A DNA stretch of 64,000 bases, from contig NC_088860.1 in the NCBI RefSeq assembly GCF_963853765.1, positions 27,032,001 to 27,096,000 on the forward strand, given 5' to 3'. The DNA comes from Magallana gigas. Its lineage: Eukaryota. The position numbers were made by a program, and so were the translations under genes. This document shows, piece after piece, positions 2,526-44,100 of the stretch (position 1 is its first letter; every line of letters starts with the position of its first letter). The notes under the pieces were generated by a model. That model was not told the origin of the DNA. It was given only the letters and a program-made list of their open reading frames with translations, and ran no database searches.

Positions 2526-2560
2526 CTAGAACTGTATCATTATAGCTCCAGTCTCTACAG

Positions 2561-21912: not shown

Positions 21913-24900
21913 TCATTCTTTCTGCCCTGATGCCTTTCTTGATTTGTGCTGGGCCTCCCAGGCGATCTGTTTCTGTCGCTCCTTCTCTCGTTCTCTTGCA
22001 GCTTCCTGTAAAAGAAAGAAATTTGAGATTCTTTATTCCCATAACTTATTCATGGTCGACAAATCATCTTAAAAATAATTACTTTTTTATAAAATGATTT
22101 ACATTGCACATAAAAATTTTCCAGAAACATTAAACCAAGCATCATAAATTTTACAACATTAAAAGCAGCATTTGGAGAAAAATACCCAAATCAAAATTAT
22201 TACAGCTTAATTAAGGTACTGCACAAATCTGGGAGAAATTAGATTGGATGATACACGTACCTCTTCCTTCATCTTGTTGACCATGTACTCAATGTTAACG
22301 CGGAGACTCTCAAGCTTTCTCTCCTTGGTGTTCTCTTCGTTGATCAGGCTCAAAGCTCGGTTCAGCGGGAAGAAATCATACACGTTGTGCTGCAGCTGGT
22401 TAAAGACGTGAAGCTCAAGAGCGCTGTAATCGTTGGGGCGTGTCTCATCCAGGTGGAGGAAGAAAAACAGGTAGGCCCATTGGTAATGCTCTGTTCTTAC
22501 ATGTTTCTCGAATCCCTTTATTTAAAGAATAAAAATCTTTTAACTATTTGAAAACTGTACATCAAGAATCTCTCTTGTCCATGTCTCCATTTTTTTTCCC
22601 TAAAATAATATCACAATCATTTGTTACATGCTCTCTATAATTACTCTTTCTTTTAAGTTATATTAAGTAAAATTTTTACTTACCCCTCCATGTCGCTCAA
22701 AATCGTAAGACTCTCTGCTACAAATGAAGCAGTTGTTCATCATGTCCTTATCAATCTCCCACTAAAACAAATGAAGGAGCATGTCATTTTCAGATGTATA
22801 AAAACTGCTTTCTAATTTAAGTAAAATGAGTATGCTTTTTATATTCCAAGTACAAATATGGAAACTTTAAAGCATTTTCTCTCATAAATGGCCTTCATAG
22901 ACTTCTGGTAATGCAACTTATTTCAAAATGTTATGGGTCTTCTTACTATATAGCAATAAAATACTTTTCAAAAGCCATACTATTGACATCACCATTTAGT
23001 TTTATCATGCTTTGTTAACTTGCATGAAATTTTGTTTGCATAATACCAGTTATGATAATTTTCCATAAGAATAGAAATGCACACTATAACCAAATAGACT
23101 GAATTGAAATTGGCTGTTAATAGTCCTTTATCTCAATGAGAGTTGTCCCTCTTCTGAGAGGGCTAATATTAATGCACCTTAAACTGCTGGGGTACATTAC
23201 CTTGGCATCTCTGAGCTGGGAGAACGTGTCCACAATGATACCAAAGATGATGTTCAAGCCGACTGTGGTGACCAGGATGAAGAAGGTCACATCAAAAATT
23301 GTCACGTAGATGGCCTTATCGAAGTCGTTGTCCATCAAGGCCTCAAACGTCTGCTCAATTAAATCAACACAATATAGTTACATACTGTCTAGTTGTATCA
23401 AAACGTCTGCTCAAGGCTAATCAACACCATGTATAAATGCATTTAAGGTGTAATGTATCAAATTCATCTCAATGTCCACTCCTTCAATTTAATTTCTTAA
23501 TAATTTCATGCTCTACTGATCGACCTATGACCAATTCTTGCCATGTATGATTTAATTCTCACCATCCAATGTTATACGAGGGTTGTTCGGAAATTATTGA
23601 GACAAATCGATTATTTTCTTTTCTAAGTGACGAATTTTGGTGAAAATTGGCATAGACACTGATGAAACACCAACAATTAATAAAACAAAGTAATATTAAA
23701 AGAATATTTAATATTTTTGTTTAGACAGTAGATAAACAAGTCGGTGGTCGGGGTACCCGGCGCAGCCATTAACTCGGAGATAACACAACTTAAATATCTA
23801 CTTTATAAGTGTCCGTAGAATTACAGTTTATGATAAAAGAAATCAAATTAAATATGTTCATTTTGCTATTCTTTGCGACTAACTGTTGATTAAGTTTCAC
23901 TGATGTTCGAGTTGAAATACGGATATGGTACACATATATTTACCAAACAATAAAAATCTGTCAACGACTTTACATTGAATTTTGACGTCAAGGCGGCGCA
24001 ACGAAAACCATTAAACTGGTGAAAATCTCAGAAGAAGACCTTTTAAAGCCAAGCAATTGCGTAAAAAAACTATACGATGACAAGACAAGGTATAGAACTT
24101 CAGTTCATCATTTTTTTCACTGATTGTTTAACTAGAATTAGGCCAAAGGGATTAATTAACAACTTTTGACACACTAACTGTTGTCAACAGTTCCAAAATA
24201 TGTAAAAAAAAAAAAATGACTGCAGGAGACATTCACAGTAATTAGACTTTCGGGTAAAAATAACTCGATTTTTTCTCTAAAAAAAACAAGAATGAGAGAA
24301 AATGTAAATGATGACATCTTGAAATTAAAACAAAAGAGGAGAAATAAAGAATAATTCTTATTTCAGTTCGTTCGTAAGGTGTTTAAAACACGGGAGCAAT
24401 AAGAAGCGTTAAAATGACGTTGCGAAAAGTTTGCGGTTGCGCCGGGTTACAGGACGAAGGCACGTTGGTCAGCTTACTAGGAATGATCTATTCATGCCAT
24501 GAACAAAAAACTTTTCACATTGATAAACTCTATCCTGATTTACGTTTTGGTGAAATTTCAAGAGTTTATCTTTTTCACTAAAAGAATAAGAGAAAATGTC
24601 TCAATAATTTCCGAACAACCCTCGTACATGTTAAATTGTGACGTTTCATTGCAACATTGAGAAATGGTACATTGTGGGAATTGGTCCAAGGCCAGCCCAG
24701 GTTTTTATTAGGATTTTTTGTTTTCAATACATGTACATGTACAATTATTCAGAATTGGACCTCTTCTCACAAAAATCTTGGAGAACTTCTTTGGATAATC
24801 TACAAAACGTACAGTGCAATTCTGCAAAATGTGAATTTCATCAGAAATACCGTACCGTGTAAGGCGAATCGACGAACCCGTGGTGGATCATGGTGATGAA

Positions 24901-27900
24901 GCAATGGTACACCGTCCTACAGTGGCGACCGTCGTCCTCCTTCAGGAATGTTTCCCTGAAGAAGGCGAAGGAAATCAGCGAGTAACAGAAGAACACCGCC
25001 AGACCAAGTAACGCCACCATCAGCAGTGATTTTCCTGTGTGAGGAATAAATCAGTATCTAAGTCAATGTAATGTCATAAGTTTCTATAGTTGTCATACAA
25101 CAGTAAATAATTACAGTCTAAAAGAGCAGAATGCATTAGCTATATATCCCTATGATAATTTGAGACTTTCAAATTCTAAGTGCTAATAAGAATTTGTAAA
25201 TATATACAAAAATTTTAATGTTTTTCCTGATCACAACTACCTAAGGTGTTCTGTCAACAACAAAAATAATCACTGGTATCTTGCAGTTTCTTACCATTGG
25301 TGGTTACTGCAGCAATGACTCTCTTGAGTAACTGGTTTAACTCCGATATATGGAGAAGGTGGAAGGCAAAGAAGTACCCATAAAATACAGTTCCCAAGAC
25401 TGAGCATGCAAAAAATACCTGAAAAAAACCCCATCCATGCCAGAAATTTAATCAAAATCTCTAAATTAAAAAATAAAATTGGACTGAACTTTATAAAGTG
25501 ACATCACAAAAAATATCAGATAATTATCAAATGAATACACTGTTATCTTGTAATTATTGAATGTATAAAAATTAATTTAAGGTAACTTACAAAGTAATAG
25601 ATTGTTTTAAAGTTGTAGATCTCGATTTCTAAGTGCGAGCGTCCTGTTTTCTTCTCATGCCAAGATCTAAAATCATTTTCATCATCGTTTGATGACCTGT
25701 AAAATATTAATAATTGAACATGAAAAAAAAAGAAATATTTTCACACACTTGCGCACTCAAAAATATACAATTGATTCAAGTAAATGAATGATCTAATAAA
25801 AAATCAATTCGGTAATAAGTAATATGCTTTATTGGTCAGAATGCATTAGGAACTGAAATCCTCAATGCAAAAAAGATAAAGTAAATGTTCATTAAAGAAC
25901 AGAGATTTAGAAGTTTGTGTTATCTGTATATACAATATAATTAATCATTAATAAATAGCAATTAATAAATAGACTGTTGGCAATATGGCTAGAAGAATTA
26001 AAACTGAGGATTGCGAAAACTAAAATATAATGAGCAAGGTATTAATATTTCTTCTTAATAAAGAAGAATCCAAAGTTTATCAAGGCTGTTTGCATAGAAT
26101 ATTAATTATAGAGACAGTACAGCTGAAAACACATGTGTGAATAACTTCAGATTTACCCATTGTATCGTTAGGAAATAAGAAATAACGTTGATTGTAATAG
26201 TTGAAATACATAAAAATCCCTTTCACATATCTAATTAACGTAATTATGAGCTTACGGAAATTTAAGGGTTGTACAAACCGGAATAATCTTATATCGTTTA
26301 CGTGGACTTTGATTGACAGTAATTGACACGTGCTGAAAACTACCAGATCTTCGTCCGGCTACAGTCATCATGGTATACAAGGTTAAAGGGACTCTCTAAA
26401 CGGAACGCATCATCACTTTCTCGATAATTTATTGATGGTTTACCAATTTTGGTTCATTTTAACATGAACAGACATAAATATGTCAAATAACCCCTCATGG
26501 GGCCTCATTTACAAAAATGAATTGAGGTTGTAGCAACTCCTATGATAAACACGCAAAATACATGCTTACAAAATAATAATTGTGGTTATTTTTAAAACTT
26601 TGAACAATTATTACCTGGGAGAAGTAGAATGACATATTTTTATCAACAAACATGTCCAGGAGAATCTTTGCGAGCCCTGCATATGTTTTGTTTACAGTAA
26701 ATATGCATGCGTATTAGTATAGAAGGCTGAACCCCGTAACACGGTGTGAGGTAATTATATATAAATTATACGTAATTATTAATTCTAATGAAATAATTAG
26801 ATTTATTTCATGGAGAACTTTGTAATTTTCTGAAAGTTTATACATTCGTGATTGTTATACTTTCATGTTAAATACTGAAATCTGATTGGTTAAGACGCAG
26901 TTAATAATATTTACTATTACCCTCAGCGTTAGCAACGCACTTGGCAACGGGTAACATTAAAAAATGTTACATGCGCGAAAATTATGCGCGTACGGTTCGC
27001 TGTAGAATTCACGTTATTCCTATATAAAAGCAGTAAAATTTTCTTAAAAATTTTAAACAAGAGGCCAATTGGCCTTAACGGTCACCTGAGTAGCATATAT
27101 CCAAAACACAAACTTGTCATGGAGTCTCATATATGCATCTAATTAATTAGGTTTAATAATGGAGTAGAAAAATTATAAATTTGTAATGACAACCACATTT
27201 AATTCAAAAAGAACTGTGAAACCTATAATTTTGGTGAAAAACTAAAAGATCTGGTCTACAAAATAATGAATTTAGTTTTCCTTTCAGGTGTGTGGGAGTA
27301 AAGAAGATATTTTTTTAACGTTATATGCATTAGCATCTATACATCCATTTTGGCCCTGCCCTAGAGTCAAAACCCATACCCCAGGGGACATGAAAATTAA
27401 AATTTCAGTAAAGGACTTCCTGGTAAACATAATTATTAGTCGGTTTTTTTATACAGATGTGTGAGAATAGAGAAGAAGATTTTTAAACATTATATGCATT
27501 AACACTTTATTGCCATATTGCCCCCCCCTCATGTCCTGAACCCCTGACCCAGGGGCCATGAATTTCACAATTTAGGTAAAGGAGATTGTGGATATCATAA
27601 CCATGTATTCAGTTTTTTGCCCACATGTGTGGGAGTAGAGAAGAAGATTTTTTAAGATTTAAATCATTTTTACTATATGGCCATATTGGCCCCACCTAGA
27701 GCATGAACACCTAACAAAGGGGTCATGAATTTCACAATTTTAGTAGAGAGCCTCATGGACATCATAATCATGCATTTAGTTTTTAACAAATATATATGGG
27801 AGTAGAGAAGAAGATTTTCTAAGATTTAATACATTTTTACTACATGGCCATATTGGCCCCACCCTAGAGCCTGAACCCCCGACCGAGGAGTCATGAATTT

Positions 27901-28878
27901 CACAATTAAAGTAGAGGGCTCCATGGACATCATAACCATGCATTTAGTTTTTAACAAATATATATGGGAGTAGAGAAGAAGATTTTCTAAGATTTAATAC
28001 ATTTTTACTATATGGCCATATTGGCCCCACCCTAGAGCCTGAACCCCTGACCCAGGGGTCATGAATTTCACAATTAAGGTAGAGGGCTTCATGGACATCA
28101 TAATCATGCATTTAGTATTTAACAAATATATATGAGAGTAGAGAAGAAGATTTTCTAAGATTTAATACATTTTTACTACATGGCCATATTGGCCCCACCC
28201 TAAAGCCTGAACCCCTGACCGAGGGGTCATGAATTTCACAATTTAGGTTGAGGGCTTCATGGACATCATTATCATGCATTTAGTTTTTAACAAATATATA
28301 TGATAGTAGAGAAGAAGATTTTCTAAGATTTAATACATTTTTACTATTTGGCCATATTGGCCCCACCCTAGAGCATGAACACCTAACAAAGGGGTCATGA
28401 ATTTCACAATTTTAGTAGAGGGCTTCATGGACATTATAACCATGCATTTAGTTTTTAACAAATATATATGGGAGTAGAGAAGAAGATTTTCTAAGATTTA
28501 ATACATTTTTACTATATATGGCCATATTGGCCCCACCCTAGAGCCAGAACCCCTGACCCAGGGGCCATAAATTTCACAATTTTGGTAGAAGGCCTCATGG
28601 ACATCATAACCATGCATTCAGTTTTTTCCTCACTTGTGTGGAAGTAGAGAAGAAGATTTTTGAAAATTTGGCTTTTTTTGCATATTTGGCCCCGCCTGTG
28701 GCACCCCAGGGGTGGTAGAGCCATAAATTTCACAATTTAGATTCTTCTTACCATAGAGATGCTTCACACCAAAAATGGTAACGATTGGCCTGGTAGTTTT
28801 CAAGAAGAAGTTAAAAATGTAAAATTGTTAACGCACGACGCACGACGCACAACGCACGACGACGGACGAAGACCAATT

Positions 28879-28915
<37 letters not shown>

Positions 28916-31900
28916 GACATTCAGTATAACAAAATAAATAGTGCCTGTTTTGGAGGATAACAGTTGAAATTGACACCCCTCGAAAACCATTGTCAACCTC
29001 CGCTTCGCGTCGGTTGACAATGGTTTTCTCGGGGTGTCAATTTCAACTGTTACCCTCCCAAACAGGCACTATTTATATAGTAGTACAAAAATACCGCACC
29101 TGATTTTTTCAAGTCGGTTTTTTGATAAGATGCGCCGTACTGTCTCTTTAAAGAAAAGATGTTAATAAGTTGTTGGGTCTATTTGCTCAGTCTTTTTTAA
29201 AGTTGATTCCTGTCATCCTAATTATTATGATTGGTCCTCTTTCCATGACTGTATACAAACGTGAAAGCTTGATCTTCAACATGTATTTCAATGACATTTG
29301 ATGGACGTTTTCATGTCTAAGGTTCAGTGCACTTCATCAAGTAAGGGAGCAGTTAAATTATGCTTGGCATTCTTCGATACATATATAAACCGTGCATTAA
29401 AATGATGCTGAGGCATTACTGTACTCTAAATAAATAAGCTGGTTTGATCCTACATAGTTAGTAGTAGATTTCTATAAGGGATTTGGACATGGGTGTAATC
29501 ATTACTTATTATGGTAGTAGTACATATCTAATTTCCATTCACCAAAAGCACCTGTACATAAAATGGCAGATAAATAAGCTCTACAGATAAAGTGAAGGGG
29601 AAGTAACCCACCTCCTTTCACTCCTGTAAAAGAGACATATTAAATCATGCGCACTATTGGTCTCAAGGTTCAAACAAAGATAATGATATGATCAGGTGAA
29701 GTAAGATGTCCATTTCCACCAGTCATGACATTTATATTAAAAACATAGTTAGCTATACAAGCTTAATCATAATTCCTCTCCGACTCTTAGCAAAAGCAGG
29801 AGGCTAATAAACATTCTTTCAAAATCCAAAAGGGTGTTCTGTCTAGAAATCATTCAACCTTGACCATTTAAAAAAAAAAAAAAATATGCTCAGGTATTGT
29901 AGTTTAATTTCTTTGATAACTATGATGTTATAATTTCTGATATACTGAAAGATACATGCAATTGAGATATTGATGCATGGGCCTGATAAACTCAATCATA
30001 CTGTCAATCATGTATATATGCAATGCCTGAAATGCTACTGCTGCAATAGTATAATGATTCAAACTAAAATGTCTCCACTAACATGTCAACTCTCTCCTTT
30101 TGGGAAGTTTAAACCTGACTTATAAGGTGAAGGATACTTACAATTTTTTCTTGATCCAAGTGTATGGTGGGAAGGTTGGATTGTTGGATATGAGAAACGT
30201 GATGAGGATACACAAACTGAGGAGGTTATGTACGCCGCCCCAAACGTACAGGAATGGCTCGTAGTTTGACATTGTGTACTCGGGCTTGGCACTGCAAGGA
30301 AGGACAGAGTAGTTAAATAACCGCTAAGGGAAATAACTCCAGTTGTGTTACTAATTGTTATTGTATGAAGGAGAGATACAATAGGGCATTCTAAACAAAA
30401 ATAAATAAAATAATCAAGAGCCCAATCTTTTATCTTATGGAGAAAAAAATAAATTCATAGATTGATGTTACTGAACCATTTTAAAATTGCAGTTTCCTGC
30501 TTTACATTAATGGGATACAAGGGCCAGGCACAAAAATATGTCATGGCAAGGCATGAGTGCAAAATGAAAACAGTATATTACCTGTTCGTGTCAGATGTTC
30601 CATCAGCAAGTTTTGGGTCTCTCCATGTTATCATGATGATAATGCTGATTACAAAACTCAGGAACACCACAATGTAATTAATGGGGATCCTGTCAAAAGT
30701 CAACATAATTGATTACACAACTCAGGAACACCACACAATGTAATTCATGGGGATTCTGTCAAAAGTCAACATAATTGATTACAAAACTCAGGAATACCAC
30801 AATGTTATTTGAGGGGATCCTGTCAAAAGTCAACATAATTGATTACAAAACTCAGGAACACCACAGTTACTGCATGTAGATTCCTAATTTAAAGCGAGGA
30901 ATTAATATATGGGTAAAATCATGAGAAACACATCTTGTGGATTTTAAAATCTCTATTTTATTTTTCGAAAAGATGTTAACTAAATGTAACTATGATCAAA
31001 ATTCTGCGTTTGCGATTTTATATTCTCACCATTTGATGCAAAGCATTTCAAACGTGGAATTAAATTCTCGCGTAAAATAAGGAATCTAAAGTATTCATGG
31101 GATCCTGTCAAAAGCTGTCACTGTTACCATGCACTGTTTGGTAGTCCTTACCACAATTTGACTAGCATCTGGCCGACGGGGTTGGCGTGGACTTTTCGCT
31201 GGTACTTGATGTCCTGAATGATATCACTGGCCCAGTCCATAAAGTCACGGATCTTATTGCTGGGGGTCGTCCTGTCCACATCATACTTAAACTTCTCCTT
31301 AATCTCCTCTCTCAGCACATTCTACAGTGTGATAGTACAAAATGTCCTAATCTCCATTAAACAATAGTAATCACTAATGCAGTGAATGAAATACCTGCAG
31401 TCAAGCTGATTAGTACAGAAAACCTGCTCCCACCAGTTTGACTATATGTTCCATTCAGTGACCTTGGCAATCAAATATTTGAACTATCATGACCATGACT
31501 ACCATCTGAACATGACAATCTGTTCATTGCTATGACCTAGACAATCTGGGTTTTTTTCATCTCCAATTTATATCCATGATAATCTCTTGTCTGCATGGCT
31601 TTAACAATACAATCATGTGTAACATTTAAACTAGACAATTCATTTTGAATAAATCTGTTAACTTCAATGACTGGCTATCTGTTATCTGCAATGACCTTGA
31701 CACTAAATACTTACTCTGTCCTTGACCCTGTAGTAGATCTTTTGTAGAACATCATCTTTGATCACTTCAATGGACATGGTACTCGTGGCAAAGAAATCCC
31801 ACGCCATGTTTTGGTTGGGATTTTTGACCAGATCTATAATTCAAACAATCTTTTTTTTTACATCACACAGTCTAATAAATTAATCTCTTTGTTTCTCTCA

Positions 31901-34900
31901 GAGTACTAATGATACAATCTTCATAGCTTTCTGCATTTCTGATTTTCAAAACTGTTACATAAATCCAAGATTTTGAAGTTTGCATGAGGCCTACAAAAAA
32001 TTATCTTAGATAAGAGAAAATGCTCTTTAAAACTACGGTATGCAAGTCAGAAGTTAACTTTACGGCCTTAAGGCTAATGCAGAATATGTCATGTTCTATT
32101 GTTTCCCATACCACTATCTGCATAAAACTACTACTGTTAGCCAACTTTTTTTTAAAATAAAAATAACTTCGTTGTAAAAGACAAGATATGTCATCTTGAA
32201 TACAAGATTGTTTTACAGTGCCATATTTAGGTATAGAATTTGCCTCTGCAGGCAGAATTATAAATGGAAAAAAAACCTTGTTTTTGCAATATCTTTCACA
32301 AGTAATAGCCTAAAGTGTCAGCCTCTGGCTGCACACAAACTTACAGTCTCATTCTTTACACTAATAAAACACCCACTTACAGAGTCTCATTTTTTACACT
32401 AATACAAAGCACACTTACTGAGTCTCTTTACACTAATACAACGCACACTTACGGAGTCTTTTTAACACTAATAAAACACCCACTTACAGAGTCTCATTCT
32501 TTACACTAATACAACACACACTTACAGAGTCTTTTTACACTAATAAAACACCCACTTACAGAGTCTCATTCTTTACACTAATACAACGCAAACTTACTGA
32601 GTCTCTTTACACTAATACAACGCACACTTACTGAGTCTTTTTACACTAATAAAACACCCACTTACAGAGTCTCATTCTTTACACTAATACAATGCACACT
32701 TACGGAGTCTTTTTACACTAATAAAACACCCACTTACAGAGTCTCATTCTTTACACTAAAACAACGCAAACTTACTGAGTCTCTTTACACTAATACAATG
32801 CACACTTACGGAGTCTTTTTACACTAATAAAACACCCACTTACAGAGTCTCATTCTTTACACTAAAACAACGCAAACTTACTGAGTCTCTTTACACTAAT
32901 ACAACGCACACTTACGGAGTCTTTTTACACTAATAAAACACCCACTTACAGTCTCATTCTTTACACTAATACAACGCACACTTACGGAGTCTTTTTACAC
33001 TAATAAAACACCCACTTACAGAGTCTCATTCTTTACACTAATACAACGCAAACTTATGGAGTCTCTTAACATTAATACAACGAGCACTTACGTATCCTTA
33101 TGGACTCTATTTACACTAATACAATGCGCACTTATGGAGTTTCTTAATACTAATACAACGAGCACTTACGGACTCTATTTACACTTTTTCATCACACACT
33201 TACGGTGTCTCTTTACATCGTCCTCCAGGTCCAGTTTCCTACACAGGATGTGATAATACGCGTACCCTGTGTCCTGTATCAGGTTATACAGCTCGTCAAA
33301 GTCGGGGTCTCGCTTCTGTAAAACAATTCATCAAGATGTCAACTCAAAACAAGTAAGCCACTGAAATTGGCAATAGTCCTCATTAAATCAAAGGAAATGG
33401 CAACATTAAATGGTATTCAATAACAAAATATTTTGTACCAAACACATGCAATTTTATATAAAAGTTTATTTATATAATATTTTAATATTTATCATCATTG
33501 ATCAATGGAATTCGAAGTATTTTGTCAAATGATAGATTTATTATGAATGCAGATATAATCTAATTGAAAACACAAATATTTGCAAACGCTAATAGACAAT
33601 GAAGTCATACACGTACATTTCCAAAAGCTTTCACAAGCAGGGAAAGTGTAAAGCAAGACTCCATTTAGATAATACTCCAATATACAACAATGAGAGCCGA
33701 TAAAACTCAGCATCATGTCTCAATAAGACTTGAATAAAATTCAACTCCCTTTTTACGGACAGAAAAAAAAATGCTAAGTAGAAAATATTTTTCTCATCTA
33801 AAGTCTAGCTATCATCTTTATCATTATTCAAGACTTTGTATCTTTATTACTCATGAGCAAGTATCTAAGTTGACATAGGTGTTTACTGTTGCCAATGTGT
33901 TTTAAATGTAAGTCTAAGTAAGATCATTCATTAGAGCAAATCAAACTCTTACAGCAATTAACTACACTTAATCAGTCTGTATTCTTTTAAGGTAGCTCGC
34001 AAGTTTGCAGATATCGATGTCATAATAGCAAAATAACTAAGTGTAAAAAAAAATTACAGCATGTCCATTGATTTTACTTGTGTTGATCAATATTGGTGTG
34101 AATAAAATGCTATCAAAACATTACTATGCAGATGAATCACGAAAAAATTTCAGAGATAGAATTTTGAAATCATCCTAAGGGTAACTGCATGTAACTGATA
34201 ATTTCTCAGGGTTGTCTGACTTTAATGAACCTGCAAGCTACCTTAAGTTGGCTGGGTCAGCAAATTACTCATCAAATTAACCAATTTCTTTTTTTTTTAA
34301 ATATAATATTTTCAGCTATAGACTATCTTAAGGTAAAGAAAATTCCATTAATTAAATTAGCTTTAAAATTTAAATATTTTTTAAAATTTAAATATTTTCC
34401 TATATCTTTATATGCATAGCTTTTTTTTCATTTCTAAAGAAGATCGATACAGCCTTAAGATGGCCACAACTAGCCGGCCATCTTAATACAACCTGTTAGA
34501 AAACAAAACACATTCCTTGTAATCATGCAAACATTCTTTCCTTAATTAACATTCAATCAGAAATTATCACACATATTTGTTATGCAATCACAATACAGTA
34601 AAACTTGGTTATAGCGAAGTCCTAGGGACCAATTGATTTACTTCGTTATGTCCATAAATCGTTATATCCATATAACAAATTCATAATTATAATAGCTTTA
34701 GCGAATTCACTATACACATGTTTTCTTTCACCAAACTATAATTTTCACTAATTGAGGCTTAGAATAAAAATATATTACTTTAGTACCAATAATGATAGGA
34801 TTTTGAGTTGAAAAATTTATATAAATATTTTTTTTTCAAAGTATTATGTTAAATAGTAGTTCAAACTTTATTTAACTGAAAGAAATTCGTTATAAAAGTA

Positions 34901-36351
34901 TTAAATTTCGTTATTATTAACTTCTACAGGACACAAAATCAGTTTGCTATATCTGTAAATTCATTATATCCCAATTCGTTATAACCATAAAGTTTTGCAA
35001 AGGTTTGTTAGGAATTTTACCGGGGACTCAAAAAAAACTTCGCTACATCTGAGAATTTGGTATATCCGTGTTCATACTAAACAAGTTTTACTGTATCATT
35101 CTTTCATACTTATACCACAATCTAAAAATCCATTCGTTATTCCACTTAATTAAATCATAAACTTAGAAACACATAAAAACATATGTATAACACATACAAC
35201 TTGATTGTAAAAAAACCAACAATTTCAAACCATTCAATTTCATTCTCATATCATACGTTATGATATACTTACTTTTTCCTATTTATTTAAAACAAACACA
35301 TTTTACAAATTAGGCAACCGTATTTGTTCAATATTTAGTTGTTTAAAATCATTGACATCATTATAAATTTTAAGCTAAATAATTTAATTCTTCATAAACT
35401 CAAATAAATTGCCACAATGAAAGCTAAATTTCTTATTTCTAAAAATAAAAGATATAAACACATCTAAAACATCAAAAGAAAGTTTCTTGCTTGTCAAAAC
35501 AACAATTGTGGGCTAGATTGGTTAAAAAATACACTTTGTGGTTAAAAGTGATCACAAATTGATTGTACTGTTTCAGTTAAGGGTGTTTAGGACATGGGTG
35601 TGATAATTAATCATTAGATTGGGTTTTGTAAATGTAAACTCAGTGACATTAGGTATTAATAGCCTGCACTATGATTAAAAGATGAAAATCTTTCATCTAG
35701 AACCAAATTAAAAATTTTAACAAAATTTCTTTAGCAAATGTGGTGGTATAATTGGAAGACAGGTGGAAGAGGGGGTCAAATATGGAGTTAGGTAGGTACA
35801 TATAAAGGAATATTTCATTTTTATTGAGAAAGCATTGCCTAATTAGTATTGCTAGCTTGATAAAAAAAAAATTGCTAAAGCACTACACAGAAAATGATTC
35901 AATTATAATCTACAATTTATGACAAATATTAATAAAGTGAACTATGACACCAGCACTCCATTAGAATAGCAAAAAAAAAAAAAGCACAGATATATCCATT
36001 ACCTTTTTAGCAGGCGACCGATCCATTTCCTAATGGTGCAAAATATTCAGTGGTGATTGGTGAACAGATGAAAATGAAATGATATATCACAGATATAATA
36101 AGAACAAACACCCAAATGCTGCCCTCATGGATTCACTATATTGATAAACTATACAAGGATGAATATATCATTAAAAGAAGTTGTGAAGACTGAATCCTAA
36201 ATAAGTTTTAGCATCTAGGCTGATTATATACTGATTGAAATAATACAATGTAGTACAGATATACTGCTATGTATTAAATACCTTATACTTGTATTATGCC
36301 CTACATATATGTACATCTCTGTTAGTATTTTTCTAAAGAATCCAGTGATCG

Positions 36352-36402
<51 letters not shown>

Positions 36403-38038
36403 TGCTATTGAGATAAAAAGTCAATCATTATTAAATCTGAATTTTCACTGGATCCTTATCTAACCTTAAAACTACATGTCCATAACAAGGCATTAATGAG
36501 CTGGCTATAAATATATATATGATTGTAATCTACATGCACCATCAACGACTACCGTAAATATTGTAAAGACTGGTGTAAAGAATGGTGTAAATACAGTAAA
36601 GATTGGTGTAAACATTGTAAAGAACAGTGAAAATACTGTAAAGACTGATCGAAATACTGTAAATATGTGTAAATACTGTAAATAAAGGACTGTAGATCAT
36701 AGAAATGCTGTAATTTTACAGATGTATTGTTCTTTTCTTACCTGCAGCTGATTAAAAGCCTCGGTCATCGTTATGACACACAGGTCAGCATCTAGGTATT
36801 CCATTACTTCCTGTAAGACACAATGAGTTACCATGACAACATTTCATGAAAGCTGTGATATCTTTTACAATGTCATGAGATCACTTTGAATTCATAATTA
36901 TCATCCTTAAAACTTTTGCATATTTTTTAATCTTTTATAAATATAGTTGTCTCACTTAAAATTATCATCACAAATTCATTATTTAATATACATGTATATG
37001 AATCAAATTCTGATAGAAATCAAATAGAATCAAGAACATAGAAGGACAACCATCATTTCATTCCCACACAATTAATCCCTTAATATTACCCTTGAAGTTC
37101 ATTGAATTTTAAGTTAATTACATAGAAAACAGCCAAAAATTATTTTTCAATCTTTCTTTGCAATGTTTTAAGCCACAGCATACCATACAGTTCCTAGATT
37201 TATATGCAAATTATTGGGAAATCAATAATTCTTGTTTGAAAACAATATCATTTCTGCATTATTTATATTTTACATCATTATAAATCATCCAAATAATTAA
37301 AAAAACATTTCTACCATTATAGCATTTAAGCTGTAGTACAGTCTTGTTTGGGGAGAAAATGAAGGTGAAGATACATGTACAGATTTAACATGTACTTGCA
37401 TATGGGTAAAAACCAGGGATTGGGGGGGGGATCTTACCCCCTCCCCCCTCCCCCCTTTTATTTTTAATCTTAAGATATACTCTATCATTCTTTAAAAATA
37501 ATTTTTGTTTGTCAAGATTTTGGATAAGTCTAACCCTTCCATTTTCAATTTGTTTCAAACACAACTTACTTGCGTTTGGGTTTAAAATTATTAGCATAAT
37601 GTAAAATACATATTACTCAGTACTGAAACAAGCAATAAGTCACATTGCCCAAAAGCTGTCATTTCTTAGCTATATTGAATGAAAAAGCATTTATAAATAT
37701 GTGATAATCAGCAAATAAACTATATATATCCATATTTACACTACAATTATAGCATTTTAGTGCAAAAATTAATAATTAAAAAATAAAGGCAAACCACAAG
37801 TATAGAGAAGTCGTCTAGAAAAAAGAACAGGAGTAAATTAAATGACTACTGAAAAGACGATAAGCACTGGAGAATAAAGGATGTGCAGGGAAAAAAGATG
37901 TGCAACTGGAAGATGAAGGGGAGGATCGATAATTGTTAAAGAGACTAACATCAGAGAGAATCACAAGTTAAATTGGAGTGTGCAAACAGGGTGGCTATGC
38001 ATCTAGACAATGATGCTACAAAATCTAGAGCACAAAGG

Positions 38039-38109
<71 letters not shown>

Positions 38110-41100
38110 TGGAGAAAGAGAGAGAGGGAAAAAAGAGAGATAAAAGAAGGTAGAGACAAATTAAGGAGTGATCATCTTACCCTCTTAGAGCGAACCAGGA
38201 CTATGGAGTCTCGATGCGTGGATATCTAATGCAGTATACACACAAAATTGACAACAAGCATGCTTCATACATTGACAACATCGAAATCAAGAAAAAAAGC
38301 TATCTTATTTTATTTTGTTGTATTTGTAGGAGGTTGGGGAGTTGAGGGGAGTGGGTTTATTTTTTACTTGCTTTTTAAGAAAACAATGAAGGTGGGAGAC
38401 AATTTATTCTGCGTGTTTGCGTGTTTGGCGGCCAGGCATTATTTTTTTTCTTTCAATGCTTTCATGGCTGAAAGGGAGGATGTCATTTCACCTGCAGACA
38501 AAATTAAATCCACAACAACCATGCCCAATTTAATATTAAGTTTATAAAACAACAACAGCAACAACAACAACAAACAATGTCTGAGAAAAGATACAACAGG
38601 GTTCTCTCCCTTACCACACTTGCAGGTCCTTTCATTGTTTCATCCTTAACAAGTACAAAAGGGTGCCAGTTATAAATCTGTGACTTAAAATCTCTTGAAA
38701 AATCATTTTCATGAAAAAATCACAGAATCTAAAGAAATGTTTATTGTAATCAGTCTAATATGATGATGTTAAAAGAGATCAGATTTTCTTTCGTGTATCG
38801 AACCTTTAATGTTTTTTTGACAAATAATTTTAATGTAAATTACAGAGTGACTCAAAACAGTTATAAATAAACAATAAGAATAGAAGTTCACAGCTAACAG
38901 TCACTTGGTACAACACCAAAAGTTTGGGAAAGTTTACTTTAAAATAAAAAATCAAAAATCAAAATTATTTTGGAAGTCAGCAATTATTTTAATTAATAGA
39001 CTCGTTTATTGTTTACATAATTTCAGATTACAAAAAAAAAAGAAAACTATTTTACAATACATAACTCTTACATGCTTCAAAGCCATTGGAAGTTAGTTAA
39101 TGAATTTCAATCATTTTCCAAAATCATTTTCACCTAATCTTAATTTAAGTTTAACAATTAAGTTTTTAGGAAATGAACCTTTAATTTATATTACTTAAAT
39201 TAAATTAAATTAAATACTCGATTTTTTAAAAAAATGTTTTGGAAATTAATTTCTTAAAAAGTTTTATTTAATATCTATAGGTGCAATGTGCTGATCAATT
39301 CCATAACCATATCTTATATCGAATATTTGACCATCCAAGAAAGAAATCAACACAAGCAAATAAATGTAAAGAGATAATGAAAGGACACGGTCCTAACGAC
39401 TTTGTTCGTTAATTACCACAGTTACAGTGCGATCCTCCTTTTTCTCTGGCTTCACATTTAAAAAATCAAATGTTAAATTTCAAGGCATAAAAAAATTAAA
39501 TGATCTAATAAGAAGTCTCTGTGCATTAGGTTTAATTTAATTTTTCCAAAAATATAAAAATACATGCATAAAATGTTGTTTTGTGTGAGTATAAATAAGT
39601 ATGTATAAAAACTGAAATGCTACAACAAACTATATTTTTTTCAATCTTTATATTTGAAAATTTTTTAGAATTATCTAGTAAACTGAAATATATTTGTTAT
39701 TGCTGTGTAAAAAATGTATTTCAATTGTATTTTCTATTTAATATAGTGACTTATGAAGATACATATACACAGTTAGGATTTTCAGGCATGCATCAATAAA
39801 TCAATTCTGATTAAATCATCGTGTTGTACGTTATCTTTAGAATTATGTTGGGGTAGGTAGGTGTATGAATTTTCATGATTTTAGGTTTTATAGAATGTTT
39901 CCACATTAGAGAGGAGAGTTATGTACCTTGGCTAAAAGGGTATCCTCATCCTCTACGGGAGGGTTTTCCTCGGTCAGCGACCGGATCAGAGTGGCTATCG
40001 ACTTCTTCAGCACATACTCCTGAGAAAAAAAAATTCAAGAAGATAACAATCAACTTAAATCCAAAGCTTTAGTTGGGTCCCCCTTTTCATCAATCCATTA
40101 TTAATATGTCTTTTGATCTAATGCATTTATCAAGAGTACTATAGCTCCTACATGAAATCTCTTCAAAGAAAAAATTTTTTCACATCATATATGATAACCC
40201 AATGGATTGTTCAACCATATAATGCCACTTTAGAAATATATGTACTTGTTCAATGTTATTTTTTCTTCTTTATACACGATTGTGCAAAATCCTAACTCGG
40301 AGCAAAATTTGTGCAGTTAACACTTGATTGTTTTTTGGGGTTTTAAGAAAAATCAAGTCAGAAACTCTGTATTTATGAATACTTGATTTAAAATTTCGTC
40401 ACGAATTTAAGGTTGATTTATACTACCAACGGAATTAAATCCCCAACGAATAATTTTGCTTCCACAGTAGATAACATGTATTAATGATGCAACATAATGT
40501 CCCATTTACTGTTCACTCGGATAACGATCAATCTAATGCTATTTATATCACTAATATCTGAAAAGATGATAGAAAATGTAGAGGAAAAACCTTCTAAAAA
40601 TTTATTTTTACTGCTCTTCAAATGAGACTAGAAATAAAGATAAATAGACCTAAGGTATTTCCACCATAGAAAGAAGATAAGAAGACCTTTTTTAAATGAG
40701 ATGAAATAAAAGGTTGGGGTGGGGATATTTTGTTTACGGCGTCTTACAGACCTCTTTGATCCCACAGTTGTGGAAGTGACCGACCCTCAGAATGTGGTTC
40801 ATGTAATCACAGACTTTGTTGTCAAACACCATGGCCTGGTTTTTCTGGTTTCCCTGGAATCAACATACAGCAAAAGACTACTAAGTGGCATTAAAAGCAG
40901 TACTTAAACATGATACATGTTGTCAATATCATTAAATGAAACATTTTCTAAATGAACATTGTACCTTATTTTTATTCAAAGAAATGATGTTATTTTAGAA
41001 ATACCCCAATACACGTATATATAACTCAGAATACTGTATACAGGGAAGTATTTGCCACCGTTTCATTTCCCCGCTAATTGTCAGCGGGCGAATTTAATAC

Positions 41101-44100
41101 TGGACAAATTCCAATGTCTCAAATTATCACTCTTCAAACACATCTGTATATGGGCAAAATCAAGAAGGGGCAAAACCGTTTGCAAGTGTAGAAGGGCGAA
41201 AATTACACAGGCCAAAAAAACCCCTCTGTATATAGTGATTTTTTTATTTTTCATATAAATGATCAATATTCCATTAGAAAGAAGGTCGTAAACATATGAC
41301 CAAGCAGTTGTGTTCCCAACCCCCACAGCACCTCCATGTCTTGATACAAGTACTCACCGAAGTGAACTCTACCAGTGTGTCAAACAGCTGTACCACTAGC
41401 GGCATTGACTTGTCACTGATATTGGAGTATAAAATGTTCAGAAATTTGGTAGTTTCTCCAACCAAGTTCACCGATTTAATGTTGTCTGGTTGCTCTCGTA
41501 AATAGTTCTACAACAAAATGACACCATATGAGAGAGTTACTGACCATAAATTTGTCAACGCATGATTATAATTATTTGTCATCTGGGGGTTTGTTTATGA
41601 AAGTAAGTAACATGGTTTAGGAAAAGGAAAAACTATTGTACTTGAATATCATGATGCTGGTTGTCGCACATCAATCCCAGAATTCTTAGCACCAATTCGA
41701 TGTAGCCATCGTCCCTAAACTCCAGATCCCCAGACATGCTCATTGCTGCTTCCATCAGCTCCTGTAACTCCTCCTCCTCCACGTTCTGTGAGACAAAAAA
41801 ATAAACCTTGTGATATCAGGAATCTTTTTGTTATAGACAATAACACACCCTATCAGAGAAGTCAGCACAACTACTTGTTCTACTTGCTAAAACTCCATAA
41901 CAAAATCTTTTTATCAAACCCACAAGAATTTTTTTAATGATAAAACAACTGAACCAAATCAGGCAAATCTCTGCTATCATTACAGCACAACACCTACTGT
42001 TATTCATTACTGGTATTCAAATGGTAACAGGTTCATGACCGAACTGTTTATTCAGAATCAGAATTTTAATATCTGGAATCCAATGGCTGAACTCACCCCT
42101 ATGATGACCTCAGGGTTTTCCATGGGTGCAACCTTTGACTTGGGCCCGGCCAGGCCATTCAGTTGTAGACTAGATTTGTTGCCCCCGTTCATCATTACCC
42201 CCGGCAACAACATATTACTACCCAGGTTAGATTTACCCTGGCTCAGTTTGGATTGTGATCCTAGCTGAGAGCCGAGTCGGGAACGAGATCCCATTCGGGA
42301 TCCAGCATTCGATCCCACCTGAAAGAGAAAAGCTTGTTATGAGAGAGAGATTCATATATTAAATCTTCTGCAAAATAACTTCACATATGGAAAATATTGA
42401 ATATAATATATTAATCATGTAAAATACAGTTTAAACCTTTCATTTATTAATGTGTCTTAAAAATCTTGTCATATAATGAGGTTTTTTTTAGAACCTCCCA
42501 TATACCCAATGATATAATGCATTCAAAGTTGATAAAACAATATCCAATGCCTTCCGTTAACCCAGAATAAGCTGGCAATGTTCACCTTGAGGTTGGCCAT
42601 GGACCTCTTCTTGGCCATCGATAACATGGATCCTAGCTGGTTGGCTTTCATTATCTCCTGTAATAGAGAGCCACAAGTCAATTAAATTAAACACCTTTAA
42701 TTTCTTCAATAAAGAGACAGACGTATACAATAATATATACAGAGACACAGAAAATTAGTAAATAATAGTGATGGGAATCGGTGAGATTTTCATAATCTAT
42801 AAGCGGTTTCCCGCAACTAACTTATTATCGATCATAATCGGACATTTTTACATTTTATAGTGTAGTGCTAAATAAATGTAAATAAACAAGTTACAATGAA
42901 CAGACTCATTACTAGGCTTTCGTAATTTGATTTACTTAGTATTTCTAGCCATAAAAAAATTATTTTTAACAGATTTTCTTTAGTAGGCAGTCCAACATTA
43001 ATTTTCTTGAAATCAAAATGCTTCCAAATTCGAGAATGTGCTCTATTTCCCCTAGTAAGAATATGGAGCTCGTCTGACATGTCAGCCATTTTCAGACCGC
43101 AAGCCTTTTTAGGGTTTAGATAGTTCGCATCGAGAATATTCTGTTCATGATGTGCGCTCGTTGAAAGGGACAAAAACCTCAACCGATTAATCGTAATGAA
43201 ACCTTTTATGATCGAGCTCTTCGAATGCGACAACAATCGATAGATTTTCGATTATAATCGATGATTGGAACATCACTAGTAAATAAGCTTTGAAAAGTGG
43301 TTCTTTATATTTTGGCAGGTAGTTTTTGCTTAGAAAAGTTTAACAAATCAAAATCACTTAATAGGTTTAAACCAAATGCATGCAGTTGATGGAATTGAAT
43401 TATTTTTTTATGACAATGATTCTTGTACTTCTTTTTCATACGAGGAAGTGATTCAACTCTTAAGGCTAGACAAAGCAGATACTCTAAACTGATTTAATGC
43501 TGTATATGAGCTGGCACTGACCGTCTGAGCCAGTTTGCCGGTTTCCATGGCTTTCCTGAGAGCTTTGGCCTGCTGTACTGCTTCCTCCACCTTGGCTTGA
43601 TGCATGGCATGGAGAAGTCGCCTACAAACACAGAACTTAGTCAATAAAACACATAACACAAGACGTAAACTACAAAACATGAAATCAAGACTCTGACAGC
43701 GACATTAACTAACTGATCCATATATGTTAATACAGATTGAATTTTCAAGTCCGAACAGCTTTACCTCTTTTAACACTGCTAAATCCGACTTCGGTTTTAA
43801 AGCAGTGAAATTTCAAGGATGATGCCTTTTTTTTTAGATAGATTTCCAAAATATCAAAATTTGATTGGCATTGCAGGTGCCTTTTAAGGCTGATCAAAGC
43901 TCATAAATAGGCACATTACACCCTAAAGCACATCCCAAACCTGTGGTTGATGTATAGTTTTCCTTTCATTGTCTTAGATTTTTGGCATTTATATCTTGTT
44001 TTATATGCATTTCCTGTTTGTAAATAATGCTTTGACAGATAATCAAAAGTATTCCAAACTCAAGATTAGCTTCATAACAGTTTCAACAACTTTTTGCAGT

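What the first reader, a model, noticed from the sequence alone, without database searches (positions are those of the whole stretch)
23201..25034. IP3R/RyR-family channel lacking the GGG(V/I)GD selectivity filter
Seen: S5-pore-S6 reads ...FFRETFLKEDDGRHCRTVYHCFITMIHHGFVDSPYT|TFEALMDNDFDKAIYVTIFDVTFFILVTTVGLNIIFGIIVDTFSQLR. Established: canonical IP3Rs have HGLRSGGGVGD and RyRs GVRAGGGIGD here. The pore-helix C-x6-C...HG, the S6 motif and the C2H2 zinc site are intact. The HG-to-(Y/F)D spacing is 25 residues versus 26 in recalled IP3R1, so this is replacement, not a missing exon. The luminal S5-pore loop is also very short. Inference: a paralogue (possibly the non-canonical IP3R-B-like lineage) with altered ion selectivity or conductance, or a non-conducting regulatory subunit. 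An unbroken ~1,700-codon frame argues against a pseudogene. This is the best candidate for new biology in the window.
Basis: partly seen in the sequence, partly recalled or inferred. Interest (0 to 1): 0.78.

Follow-up and report, generated by a model that had tools for sequence, protein, structure and literature searches.

The report
Oyster IP3R-B channel without glycine filter
This is a real, expressed oyster gene of the little-studied IP3R-B branch of the IP3-receptor/ryanodine-receptor channels; its pore loop lacks the usual glycine-rich filter, a trait shared by the whole animal branch rather than peculiar to this gene, and nobody yet knows what these channels conduct.

Summary
The minus-strand exons 25034..24856 and 23350..23201 join in phase, giving HHGFVDSPYT|TFE where IP3R and RyR have GGGxGD.

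- **Transcripts:** polyA RNA reads from three runs and one assembled transcript span exactly this junction. No reading frame of the intron encodes a glycine filter. The intron holds a 1,052-bp transposon with 30-bp inverted ends.
- **Identity:** the gene is already in public databases (P0182, 2,673 aa, auto-named IP3 receptor-like).
- **Family:** the genome also holds a canonical IP3R-A (GGGIGD), a RyR (GGGIG), one close paralogue and two RYGLIGD-type genes. On a tree the window gene sits in a mollusc clade inside a strongly supported placozoan-plus-bilaterian clade. All 51 members lack the filter. Sponge, choanoflagellate and fungal relatives keep it. This matches the published IP3R-B lineage.
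- **Constraint:** the new loop is under strong purifying selection (dN/dS about 0.04 to 0.09).
- **Retained parts:** the S6 gate, the Ca2+-sensor acids, the zinc finger and six of eleven IP3-contact residues.

Most likely it is a gated intracellular cation channel with a rebuilt filter lined by side chains. What it conducts and what ligand opens it are untested. It is a member of a known but uncharacterised kind.

The parts
21913..63998 (-). Part of the IP3R-B-type gene that lies in the window. It encodes residues 904-2673 of the public protein P0182. The N-terminal 903 residues lie beyond the right edge of the window.
   Evidence: tblastn of P0182 onto the window gives 40 exon matches at about 100% identity. 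The precomputed Pfam domains of P0182 are PF08709, PF02815, PF01365, PF08454 and PF00520. The stop codon TGA is at 21915..21913.
24856..25034 (-). Exon encoding S5, the short luminal loop, the pore helix (CRTVYHCFITMIHHG) and the first part of the filter replacement (FVDSPYT).
   Evidence: Ion_trans match; alignment to IP3R3 S5 and pore helix; RNA depth and joints on both sides.
24856..24885 (-). Codons for HHGFVDSPYT (P0182 residues 2473-2482). This is where canonical channels read HGLRSGGGVGD.
   Evidence: Translation and alignment A2. H2474 and Y2481 are invariant, and D/E2478 is present in 24 of 25 mollusc orthologues.
23351..24855 (-). GT..AG intron between the pore-helix exon and the S6 exon. 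It contains no hidden coding exon.
   Evidence: three-frame translation full of stops, no glycine motif. (the only joint is 23350->24856). (GT and AG).
23575..24626 (.). 1,052-bp non-autonomous DNA transposon (MITE-like) inside the intron, with perfect 30-bp terminal inverted repeats.
   Evidence: arms 23575-23604 and 24597-24626, 100% complementary. In one search, reads lie on both strands at very high depth with many mismatches, and loose ends fall exactly at 23573-23575 and 24625-24629. These reads therefore come from other copies of the element.
23201..23350 (-). Exon encoding TFE (with the invariant E2485), the acidic luminal turret (ALMDNDFDK) and the S6 helix with the gate.
   Evidence: alignment to IP3R3 2494-2526; roles of the S6 residues in hIP3R3.
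22684..22761 (-). Exon encoding the S6 extension and the first half of the zinc finger (WEIDKDMMNNCFICSRESYDFERHGG).
   Evidence: joints 22761->23201 and 22514->22683. It is identical in protein to the paralogue L002 (0 non-synonymous against 10 synonymous differences).
22261..22515 (-). Exon encoding the second half of the zinc finger (HVRTEH) and the C-terminal domain.
   Evidence: It was the query of the representative search.
21916..22005 (-). Last coding exon, encoding the coiled-coil tail.
41358..41785 (-). Two exons (41785..41642 and 41507..41358, separated by an intron) carrying the Ca2+-sensor acids: D1945 (codon 41665..41663) and E1999 (codon 41369..41367).
   Evidence: rat IP3R1 E1978 aligns to D1945 and E2042 to E1999. 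One search gives the codons. One search gives the role of the equivalent hIP3R3 residues E1882 and E1946.

Best explanation
The window carries the C-terminal two thirds of an expressed gene that evolves under purifying selection. It belongs to the IP3R-B lineage, the third ancient branch of the IP3R/RyR channel superfamily, which vertebrates, flies and nematodes have lost.

Shown here:
- Its pore loop is not the glycine-rich GGGxG(D/E) filter. It is a loop two residues shorter than that of filter-keeping relatives and has no glycine (FVDSPYTTFE).
- The loss of the glycine filter is shared by every placozoan and bilaterian member sampled.
- The mollusc clade has gone one step further. It replaced the terminal filter acid with T/N/S. 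It fixed H2474, Y2481 and E2485, and keeps D or E at 2478 in 24 of 25.

Inferred, not shown:
- The protein still assembles as a tetramer and works as a gated intracellular cation channel. The pore helix, the S6 pore-lining and gate residues, the S6 salt-bridge pair, the zinc-finger linker and both Ca2+-sensor carboxylates are retained.
- Ions would pass a filter lined by side chains (D2478, Y2481, T2482/T2483, E2485 and the acidic turret) rather than by glycine backbone carbonyls. Conductance and Ca2+ versus monovalent selectivity should therefore differ from IP3R-A and RyR.
- Opening is probably driven by cytosolic Ca2+ together with an anionic ligand in the N-terminal pocket. That pocket keeps the basic residues matching R265, K508, R511, R568 and K569 but has lost T266, T267, G268, R269 and Y567. 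The ligand need not be IP3.
For: Junction and expression.

Public protein and domain set.

Paralogue inventory of this genome: canonical IP3R-A with HGLRNGGGIGD (L005/L010), RyR with GVRAGGGIG (contig C6), a close paralogue with HHGFVDTPYT (L002), and two RYGLIGDMF(D/E) genes (L003, L004).

Tree (bootstrap / SH-aLRT): mollusc clade 100/99, spiralian clade 100/99, filter-less clade of 51 rows 100/98. This genome's IP3R-A and RyR fall outside the 58-row clade (100/98).

Alignment of the loop and per-column counts.

Constraint: dN/dS 0.09 over three exons. For HHGFVDSPYTTFE, pS is 0.48 against pN 0.033. Transcript SNPs are 8 synonymous to 1 non-synonymous.

S6: N2515, F2518, G2519, V2522, D2523, T2524, F2525 and R2529 match hIP3R3 N2510, F2513, G2514, I2517, D2518, T2519, F2520 and R2524 (roles in PMC8930994).

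Ca2+ site: D1945 and E1999 (PMC8930994).

IP3 pocket.

AF2 model of the channel domain: pLDDT 81, with a pore helix followed by a short helix PYTTFE. The best structural matches are RyR1 and IP3R3 transmembrane domains.

Literature: IP3RB is ancestral to bilaterians, lost in vertebrates, fly and worm, and physiologically uncharacterised (PMC7992859).
Against: - No functional data exist for this protein or any bilaterian IP3R-B.
- In canonical IP3Rs a single glycine substitution in the filter gives a dead pore (G2498S in IP3R2, G2506R/A in IP3R1; PMC7939385). A loop with no glycine might therefore not conduct.
- G268D and the loss of R269, a residue required for IP3 binding, argue against IP3 as the ligand.
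- From my own memory of Alzayady et al. 2015, which I could not read here, the Capsaspora IP3R-B neither bound IP3 nor released Ca2+ in response to it.
- The tetramer prediction gave no answer.
- The monomer model cannot show pore geometry.
- IP3R-A and RyR are each represented by a single long branch in the tree, so deep relations are not resolved. In particular, whether RyR is sister to this clade is open.
Confidence: 0.62

Rival explanations
1. The protein no longer conducts ions. It keeps the IP3R scaffold but acts as a ligand or Ca2+ sensor, an ER scaffold, or a dominant-negative or regulatory subunit that co-assembles with other family members.
For: Single glycine substitutions in the canonical filter abolish channel activity (PMC7939385). 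Here all the glycines are gone, and in molluscs so is the acid at the end of the filter. From memory, the Capsaspora IP3R-B gave no IP3-evoked Ca2+ release (Alzayady 2015, not readable here).
Against: The pore-lining S6 residues, the hinge glycine, the hydrophobic gate and the D/R salt-bridge pair are kept. They are nearly invariant across the whole clade. The replacement loop itself is under very strong constraint with fixed polar and acidic residues. The luminal turret stays acidic. A protein that never opens would not be expected to preserve these. Five genes of the superfamily plus a RyR coexist in this genome, but nothing here speaks for hetero-oligomers.
Confidence: 0.25
2. The missing filter is an artefact. 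A skipped or alternative exon, a mis-assembly or a mis-annotation hides a normal GGGxGD filter.
For: The intron between the two pore exons is 1.5 kb and is covered by RNA reads. On its face that could suggest an internal exon.
Against: No frame of the intron encodes a glycine motif. The only spliced joint is 23350->24856, seen in three raw polyA runs and in an independent transcript contig. The intron reads lie on both strands, are mismatched, and end at the inverted repeats of a transposon. The same loop is present in 25 mollusc orthologues and in the paralogue on the same chromosome.
Confidence: 0.02
3. The gene is a decaying duplicate of an IP3R whose pore is drifting. The intact frame is an accident of recent origin.
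For: The genome has several paralogues, so redundancy is conceivable.
Against: dN/dS against the paralogue is 0.09, with synonymous sites near saturation (dS about 1.3). The loop is conserved between bivalves and gastropods. Polymorphism in transcripts is 8 synonymous to 1 non-synonymous. The mRNA is spliced and polyadenylated at moderate depth.
Confidence: 0.01
4. Despite the different loop, it is functionally an ordinary IP3-gated Ca2+ release channel. The filter sequence matters less than thought.
For: The three residues classically critical for IP3 binding (R265, K508, R511; from established knowledge) are conserved, as are R568 and K569, and R504 is replaced by K. The Ca2+ sensor and gate are conserved. 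IP3R and RyR filters are wide and only weakly selective.
Against: T266P, T267M, G268D, the loss of R269 and Y567S change the phosphate-4/5 side of the pocket. R269 substitutions cut IP3 binding in IP3R1. The genome already has a canonical IP3R-A. Long-term retention of four filter-less paralogues beside it suggests a different job.
Confidence: 0.1

Closest known systems
IP3R-B lineage (Alzayady et al. 2015, Mol Biol Evol 32:2236; leech ip3rb genes in Heath-Heckman et al. 2021, PMC7992859)
   Same: It is a third branch of the superfamily beside IP3R-A and RyR. It is present in spiralians, hemichordates and Capsaspora and absent from vertebrates, Drosophila and C. elegans. The window protein clusters with Capsaspora CAOG_04510, Saccoglossus and Lottia proteins. 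Its Lottia orthologue (LOTGIDRAFT_236387) is in the data set of the leech paper's IP3R tree. It has the full IP3R domain set and length.
   Different: This gene belongs to a mollusc subclade that has also lost the acid at the end of the former filter and fixed H2474, Y2481 and E2485. Oysters carry two copies of it. The pore loop is not mentioned in the leech paper ('pore' and 'selectivity' occur 0 times). I could not read the 2015 paper to see what it says about the pore.
Canonical IP3 receptors (IP3R-A: vertebrate IP3R1-3; this genome's orthologue at contig C4, loci L005/L010)
   Same: Same overall architecture: N-terminal beta-trefoil and ARM ligand-binding region, RIH domains, 6-TM channel, pore helix, S6 gate F/G/(I or V), Ca2+-sensor carboxylates, C2H2 zinc finger and C-terminal coiled coil.
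   Different: There is no GGGVGD filter. The S5-pore luminal loop is about 50 residues shorter. Five of eleven IP3-contact residues are replaced. Two ATP-site residues are changed (N to Y, M to Q, by alignment to the residues listed). It lies in a separate clade.
Ryanodine receptors (this genome's RyR at contig C6, about 27.23 Mb)
   Same: Short S5-pore loop, pore helix, S6, zinc finger and Ca2+ site. RyR transmembrane domains are the best structural matches of the model.
   Different: RyR keeps GGGIGD, is about twice as long, and has SPRY, RyR-repeat and RR_TM4-6 domains. P0182 has none of these.
Pore-dead filter mutants of IP3Rs (IP3R2 G2498S, IP3R1 G2506R/A)
   Same: Loss of filter glycines (PMC7939385).
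   Different: Those are single changes in an otherwise canonical loop and are harmful. Here the whole loop is rebuilt, shortened by two residues, and conserved between bivalves and gastropods.

Membership tests
IP3R/RyR channel superfamily | Domain set: Ins145_P3_rec, MIR, RIH (RYDR_ITPR), RIH_assoc and a C-terminal Ion_trans channel | tested here: met
   The precomputed Pfam domains of P0182 are PF08709, PF02815, PF01365, PF08454 and PF00520. PDB matches are to IP3R1-3 and RyR1-3 only.
IP3R/RyR channel superfamily | Glycine-rich selectivity filter GGGxG(D/E) after the pore helix | tested here: not met
   The loop reads FVDSPYTTFE. No such motif is found in any frame of the gene. RNA confirms the junction.
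IP3R/RyR channel superfamily | S6 inner helix with a hydrophobic gate and hinge glycine, followed by a C2H2 zinc finger | tested here: met
   F2518, G2519 and V2522 align to hIP3R3 F2513, G2514 and I2517. The CFIC...HxxxxH spacing is identical to IP3R3.
IP3R/RyR channel superfamily | Cytosolic Ca2+-activation site (two ARM3 glutamates) | tested here: met
   D1945 and E1999 align to rat IP3R1 E1978 and E2042. The site is defined in PMC8930994. E to D is a conservative change.
IP3R-A (canonical IP3 receptor) | The eleven IP3-coordinating residues of the binding core (R265, T266, T267, G268, R269, R504, K508, R511, Y567, R568, K569 of IP3R1; list from established knowledge, Bosanac 2002) | tested here: not met
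   Six are kept or conservatively replaced (R265, R504K, K508, R511, R568, K569). Five are replaced (T266P, T267M, G268D, R269P after a short insertion, Y567S). Pairwise and profile alignments agree. The pattern is nearly invariant in 21 mollusc orthologues.
IP3R-A (canonical IP3 receptor) | Orthology to vertebrate IP3R1-3 on a tree | tested here: not met
   This genome's IP3R-A (L010) falls outside the 58-row clade that holds the window protein (support 100/98). The IP3R-A row is one long branch.
IP3R-B | Membership of the clade with Capsaspora, spiralian and hemichordate non-A, non-RyR receptors that has no vertebrate, fly or nematode member | tested here: met
   for the tree. for taxa: no vertebrate, insect or nematode among the 120 proteins listed. 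One search gives the published definition as restated in PMC7992859. The founding paper could not be read.
IP3R-B | No IP3 binding and no IP3-evoked Ca2+ release (reported for the Capsaspora member; from memory) | not testable with these tools
   Needs binding and flux assays. The sequence gives a mixed picture.
Ryanodine receptor | About 5,000 residues with SPRY, RyR-repeat and RR_TM4-6 domains, and a GGGIGD filter | tested here: not met
   P0182 is 2,673 aa without those domains. The only strong RR_TM4-6 matches in the genome are on contig C6, a different gene that has GVRAGGGIG.

The most novel reading that the evidence does not exclude
Placozoan and bilaterian IP3R-B proteins, this oyster gene included, may be a functionally distinct class of intracellular channels. 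Their rebuilt, glycine-free filter would give a different ion preference, for example monovalent cations (a counter-ion or leak pathway of the ER) or a low-conductance Ca2+ path. They would be opened by Ca2+ and by an anionic ligand other than IP3. In molluscs the acid ring of the pore would have moved one helical turn, from position 2482 to E2485.
Probability: 0.3. Interest if true: 0.75.

Novelty: new member of a known kind. Interest (0 to 1): 0.45.

Why it matters
IP3R-B is one of three ancient branches of the main intracellular Ca2+-release channel family, and it has no physiological characterisation. It is missing from vertebrates, flies and nematodes, the animals in which these channels were studied.

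This work shows that the entire placozoan-plus-bilaterian branch lacks the filter that defines the family. The replacement is tightly conserved, and the gate and Ca2+ sensor are intact. That turns a vague label ('non-canonical receptor') into a concrete question with named residues to mutate: what passes through this pore, and what opens it?

Oysters keep four such genes beside one canonical IP3R and one RyR. These genes may therefore be a sizeable part of mollusc ER signalling.

For this particular window the result is more modest. The gene is ordinary for its lineage and already annotated.

Tried and rejected
- **Hidden exon:** rejected. A six-frame motif scan of the window and the intron found nothing, and no RNA joints lead into the intron.
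- **Intron RNA coverage as an exon:** rejected. The reads lie on both strands, are mismatched, and are bounded by the 30-bp inverted repeats of a transposon.
- **Raw-read joint 25029->25290 (TT..TT):** this looked like an odd splice. It is the normal 25034/25295 intron mis-placed by 4 nt, because these samples carry the synonymous SNP at 25030.
- **Tetramer prediction:** four copies of residues 2375-2575 gave 'no answer' (score 0.01, partner pLDDT 45). This is no evidence either way.
- **Foldseek on the monomer model:** it finds RyR and IP3R transmembrane domains at E about 1e-10 but with TM only 0.25-0.28. It confirms the fold family and nothing about the filter.
- **Founding IP3R-B paper:** Alzayady 2015 could not be read by DOI or by PMC id.
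- **Literature searches on the IP3R-B pore:** nothing found.
- **Earlier notes of this scan:** nothing relevant found by words.
- **More IP3R-A and RyR sequences for the tree:** none could be fetched as files, so each is represented only by this genome's gene spliced by hand from exon translations.
- **First PDB search of the ARM3 region:** it returned nothing at E 1e-10 and was repeated at a looser threshold.

Full report
**What is in the sequence.** The finding lies on the minus strand.
- The exon 25034..24856 is preceded by ...acag, is in frame from 25032, and encodes KSLLMVALLGLAVFFCYSLISFAFFRETFLKEDDGRHCRTVYHCFITMIHHGFVDSPYT. It is followed by GTACGG.
- The next exon, 23350..23201, is preceded by ...ttgagcAG. 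It encodes TFEALMDNDFDKAIYVTIFDVTFFILVTTVGLNIIFGIIVDTFSQLRDAK and is followed by GTAATG.
- Both boundaries are in phase 0.
- Pfam's Ion_trans model matches both exons.
- Against solved structures, the first exon aligns to S5 and the pore helix of human IP3R3 (2367-2400 and 2450-2470). The second aligns to S6 (2494-2526).
- Between the HG that ends the pore helix and the (Y/F)D of S6 there are 25 residues, against 26 in IP3R3.
- A scan of all six frames of the window found no GGGxG, GGxG(D/E) or G(V/I/L)GD motif in the intron or anywhere in this gene.

**Transcript evidence.** Three polyA RNA-seq runs (raw reads) and one assembled metatranscriptome run from another study were laid on 21850-25750.
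- The joint 23350->24856 (skips 1,505 bases; CT..AC on the plus strand, which is GT..AG on the minus strand) is carried by 8, 18 and 3 reads with 7, 16 and 3 distinct starts.
- The same joint is in one 1,352-nt contig whose laid pieces include the last coding exon, the C-terminal-domain exon, the S6 exon, the S5-pore exon and the exon upstream of it.
- All exon reads have their first mate on the plus strand, which in a stranded library fits an RNA from the minus strand.
- No joint enters the intron.
- The heavy intron coverage (23553-24731) is on both strands, full of mismatches, and stops at 23573-23575 and 24625-24629. Those are the ends of a 1,052-bp element with perfect 30-bp terminal inverted repeats. 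These reads come from other copies of a MITE-like transposon, not from an exon.

**The gene and its public record.** A search of 1.84 billion representative proteins with the 85-aa C-terminal exon, and then a search with the best full-length hit, returned P0182 (2,673 aa, a cluster of 94 sequences).
- P0182 is shown without source or name, which is how the tool marks the window's own protein.
- tblastn maps its residues 904-2673 onto 40 exons between 63998 and 21916, at about 100% identity.
- The public model uses exactly the 24856|23350 junction.
- Its Pfam domains are the full IP3R set.
- Its nearest named neighbours are oyster proteins (Crassostrea virginica, Ostrea edulis, Saccostrea), auto-named 'inositol 1,4,5-trisphosphate receptor type 1/2/3-like'.
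- The RNA runs are labelled oyster, and the close paralogue's pore region is identical to proteins named Magallana gigas and Crassostrea angulata. The genome is therefore an ostreid oyster.

**Paralogues in the same genome.** Searching the whole assembly with the S6 exon gave five loci:

| Locus | Position | Pore loop |
|---|---|---|
| Window gene | this window (contig C8) | HHGFVDSPYT |
| L002 | same chromosome, 16.5 Mb away | HHGFVDTPYT |
| L003 | contig C3 | RYGLIGDMFD |
| L004 | contig C3 | RYGLIGDMFE |
| L005/L010 | contig C4 | canonical HGLRNGGGIGD, with the typical DWFPRMRAMSL tail |

The RyR was found through Pfam RR_TM4-6 on contig C6 and reads GVRAGGGIG|DE. The oyster therefore has one IP3R-A, one RyR and four filter-less genes.

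**Phylogeny.** The channel domains of 61 database proteins, plus this genome's IP3R-A and RyR (spliced by hand from exon translations), were aligned and analysed with IQ-TREE (LG+C20+F+G4; a quick version is). Support is ultrafast bootstrap / SH-aLRT.
- The window protein is nearest to C. virginica (94% identity).
- It lies in a mollusc clade of 23 rows (100/99).
- That clade lies in a spiralian clade with nemertean, flatworm, annelid and brachiopod proteins (28 rows, 100/99).
- That in turn lies in a clade of 51 rows (100/98), which also holds the RYGLIGD group, the hemichordates, an acoel and Trichoplax.
- Homoscleromorph sponges, choanoflagellates and Capsaspora CAOG_04510 come next (57 rows, 99/92), then Corallochytrium (58 rows, 100/98).
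- This genome's IP3R-A and RyR fall outside, each on a very long branch, so their mutual position is not to be trusted.
- The taxon pattern (spiralians, hemichordates and Capsaspora present; no vertebrate, insect or nematode among the 120 listed proteins) is that of the IP3R-B lineage as restated in PMC7992859.
- The Lottia orthologue of the window gene is in that paper's IP3R data set.

**How the pore loop changed.** In alignment A2, the sponge, choanoflagellate, ichthyosporean and fungal relatives read G-L-(L/R)-S-G-G-G-(L/I)-G-(E/D).
- All 51 placozoan and bilaterian proteins are two residues shorter there and have lost the glycine run.
- Most of them still carry D or E at the column of the last filter residue: 14 of 14 RYGLIGD-type, 5 of 7 hemichordate/acoel/placozoan, and 4 of 5 non-mollusc spiralians.
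- All 25 mollusc proteins have T, N or S there (T2482 in the window protein).
- Instead, the molluscs have invariant H2474, Y2481 and E2485, and D or E at 2478 in 24 of 25.
- On the tree the presence or absence of GGGxG(D/E) needs only two changes.
- The window gene is thus the most derived state of a lineage-wide trait, not a private oddity.

**Constraint.**
- Against the paralogue L002, the three exons covering S5 to the zinc finger give dN/dS 0.09, with dS about 1.3.
- The 13 codons HHGFVDSPYTTFE give pS 0.48 against pN 0.033.
- The luminal turret is looser.
- In the RNA reads, nine coding SNPs were seen in the last six exons. Eight are synonymous, including all four in the two pore exons. 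The one replacement (R to T in the tail) matches the database allele.

**What is retained.**
- **S6:** N2515, F2518, G2519, V2522, D2523, T2524, F2525 and R2529 align to hIP3R3 N2510, F2513, G2514, I2517, D2518, T2519, F2520 and R2524. In hIP3R3 these are the pore-facing asparagine, the two hydrophobic gate layers, the hinge glycine, the D/R salt bridge and the contacts to the S4-S5 linker (PMC8930994).
- **Ca2+-activation site:** it is kept as D1945 and E1999 (site defined).
- **Zinc finger:** the spacing is the same as in IP3R3.
- **IP3 pocket:** pairwise and profile alignments to mouse IP3R1 agree. R265, K508, R511, R568 and K569 are kept, and R504 becomes K. T266, T267, G268, R269 and Y567 become P, M, D, P (after a short insertion) and S. 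The pattern is nearly invariant among 21 mollusc orthologues. R269 is required for IP3 binding in IP3R1 (PMC7939385), and an aspartate in place of G268 would face the phosphates. A basic pocket survives, but IP3 as its ligand is doubtful.
- The N-terminal 903 residues lie outside the window.

**Structure.** An AlphaFold2 model of residues 2263-2660, built with the 58-row alignment, has mean pLDDT 81.
- It shows S5, a pore helix (2464-2476), three loop residues (VDS), a short helix PYTTFE (2480-2485), the acidic turret and a long S6.
- Its best structural matches are RyR1 and IP3R3 transmembrane domains (E about 1e-10).
- If the PYTTFE turn is real, E2485 sits one turn after T2482. That would put a carboxylate ring close to where the canonical D/E ring lies. 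This is inference from a monomer model.
- The tetramer job gave no answer.

**Most likely mechanism and rivals.** I put about 0.6 on a conducting, Ca2+-regulated intracellular cation channel with a filter lined by side chains, altered permeation and an uncertain ligand.
- The main rival (about 0.25) is a non-conducting sensor, scaffold or regulatory subunit. It draws on the fact that single glycine changes kill canonical pores.
- Against that rival stands the near-invariance of pore-lining and gate residues across the clade, and the strong constraint on the new loop.
- An ordinary IP3-gated Ca2+ channel gets about 0.1.
- Artefact and pseudogene readings are rejected by direct tests.

**Novelty.**
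- The lineage is named in the literature and described as understudied and physiologically uncharacterised.
- The protein is in public databases.
- I found no accessible paper that describes the pore loop of IP3R-B. The leech paper never mentions pore or selectivity, and four other full-text searches found nothing. I could not read the founding paper.
- I therefore rate this as a new member of a known kind. The family-wide filter loss and the mollusc-specific shift of the acid are worthwhile, testable observations.

Noticed in passing
window 23575-24626: A 1,052-bp MITE-like DNA transposon with perfect 30-bp terminal inverted repeats (TACGAGGGTTGTTCGGAAATTATTGAGACA) sits in the pore intron. 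Other copies are abundantly represented in RNA on both strands (contig depth 300-840 in run X1).
   Followed up: partly
L002 (G000:C8:43612076-43615225), L003 (C3:13671833-13674958), L004 (C3:29914509-29917631), L005/L010 (C4:9784000-9792500), L006/L009/L011 (C6:27222000-27237055): The genome's inventory of the superfamily is one canonical IP3R-A, one RyR, two RYGLIGD-type genes and two HHGFVD(S/T)PYT-type genes. The two genes of the last pair lie 16.5 Mb apart on one chromosome. Pinctada and Pecten also have two copies of this type.
   Followed up: partly
window 25029-25034 and 25290-25295: Raw reads report the upstream intron as 25029->25290 with TT..TT ends, while the contig gives 25033->25294 with CT..AC. 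The 4-nt shift is an alignment effect of the synonymous SNP at 25030 (T>C) in those samples, not a non-canonical splice.
   Followed up: yes
window 23405-23425 versus 23345-23365: The acceptor region ...ttgagcagACGTTT of the S6 exon is duplicated about 60 bp upstream within the intron (...ccttgagcagacgtttt...). No reads use the upstream copy.
   Followed up: partly
window 2500-11800 (+ strand): A run of plus-strand open exons encodes cysteine-rich, EGF-like stretches and one transmembrane segment. This is a separate gene downstream of the receptor gene.
   Followed up: no
window 16300-18900 (+ strand): Plus-strand exons encode a KH-like motif (ETKTQIRIPREG...) and a downstream conserved domain. 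This is another neighbouring gene, not examined.
   Followed up: no
window 32331-33216: A tandem array inside an intron of the receptor gene (repeated FTLIQRTLTESFYTNKTPTYRVS-like frames). I did not examine it.
   Followed up: no
P0263, P0264 (Oscarella, Corticium) versus the rest of alignment A2: Homoscleromorph sponge members of the IP3R-B-type clade still carry GLLSGGGLGE. This dates the filter loss to after the split from these sponges. Capsaspora lost it as well (GLENGLAS), possibly independently.
   Followed up: partly
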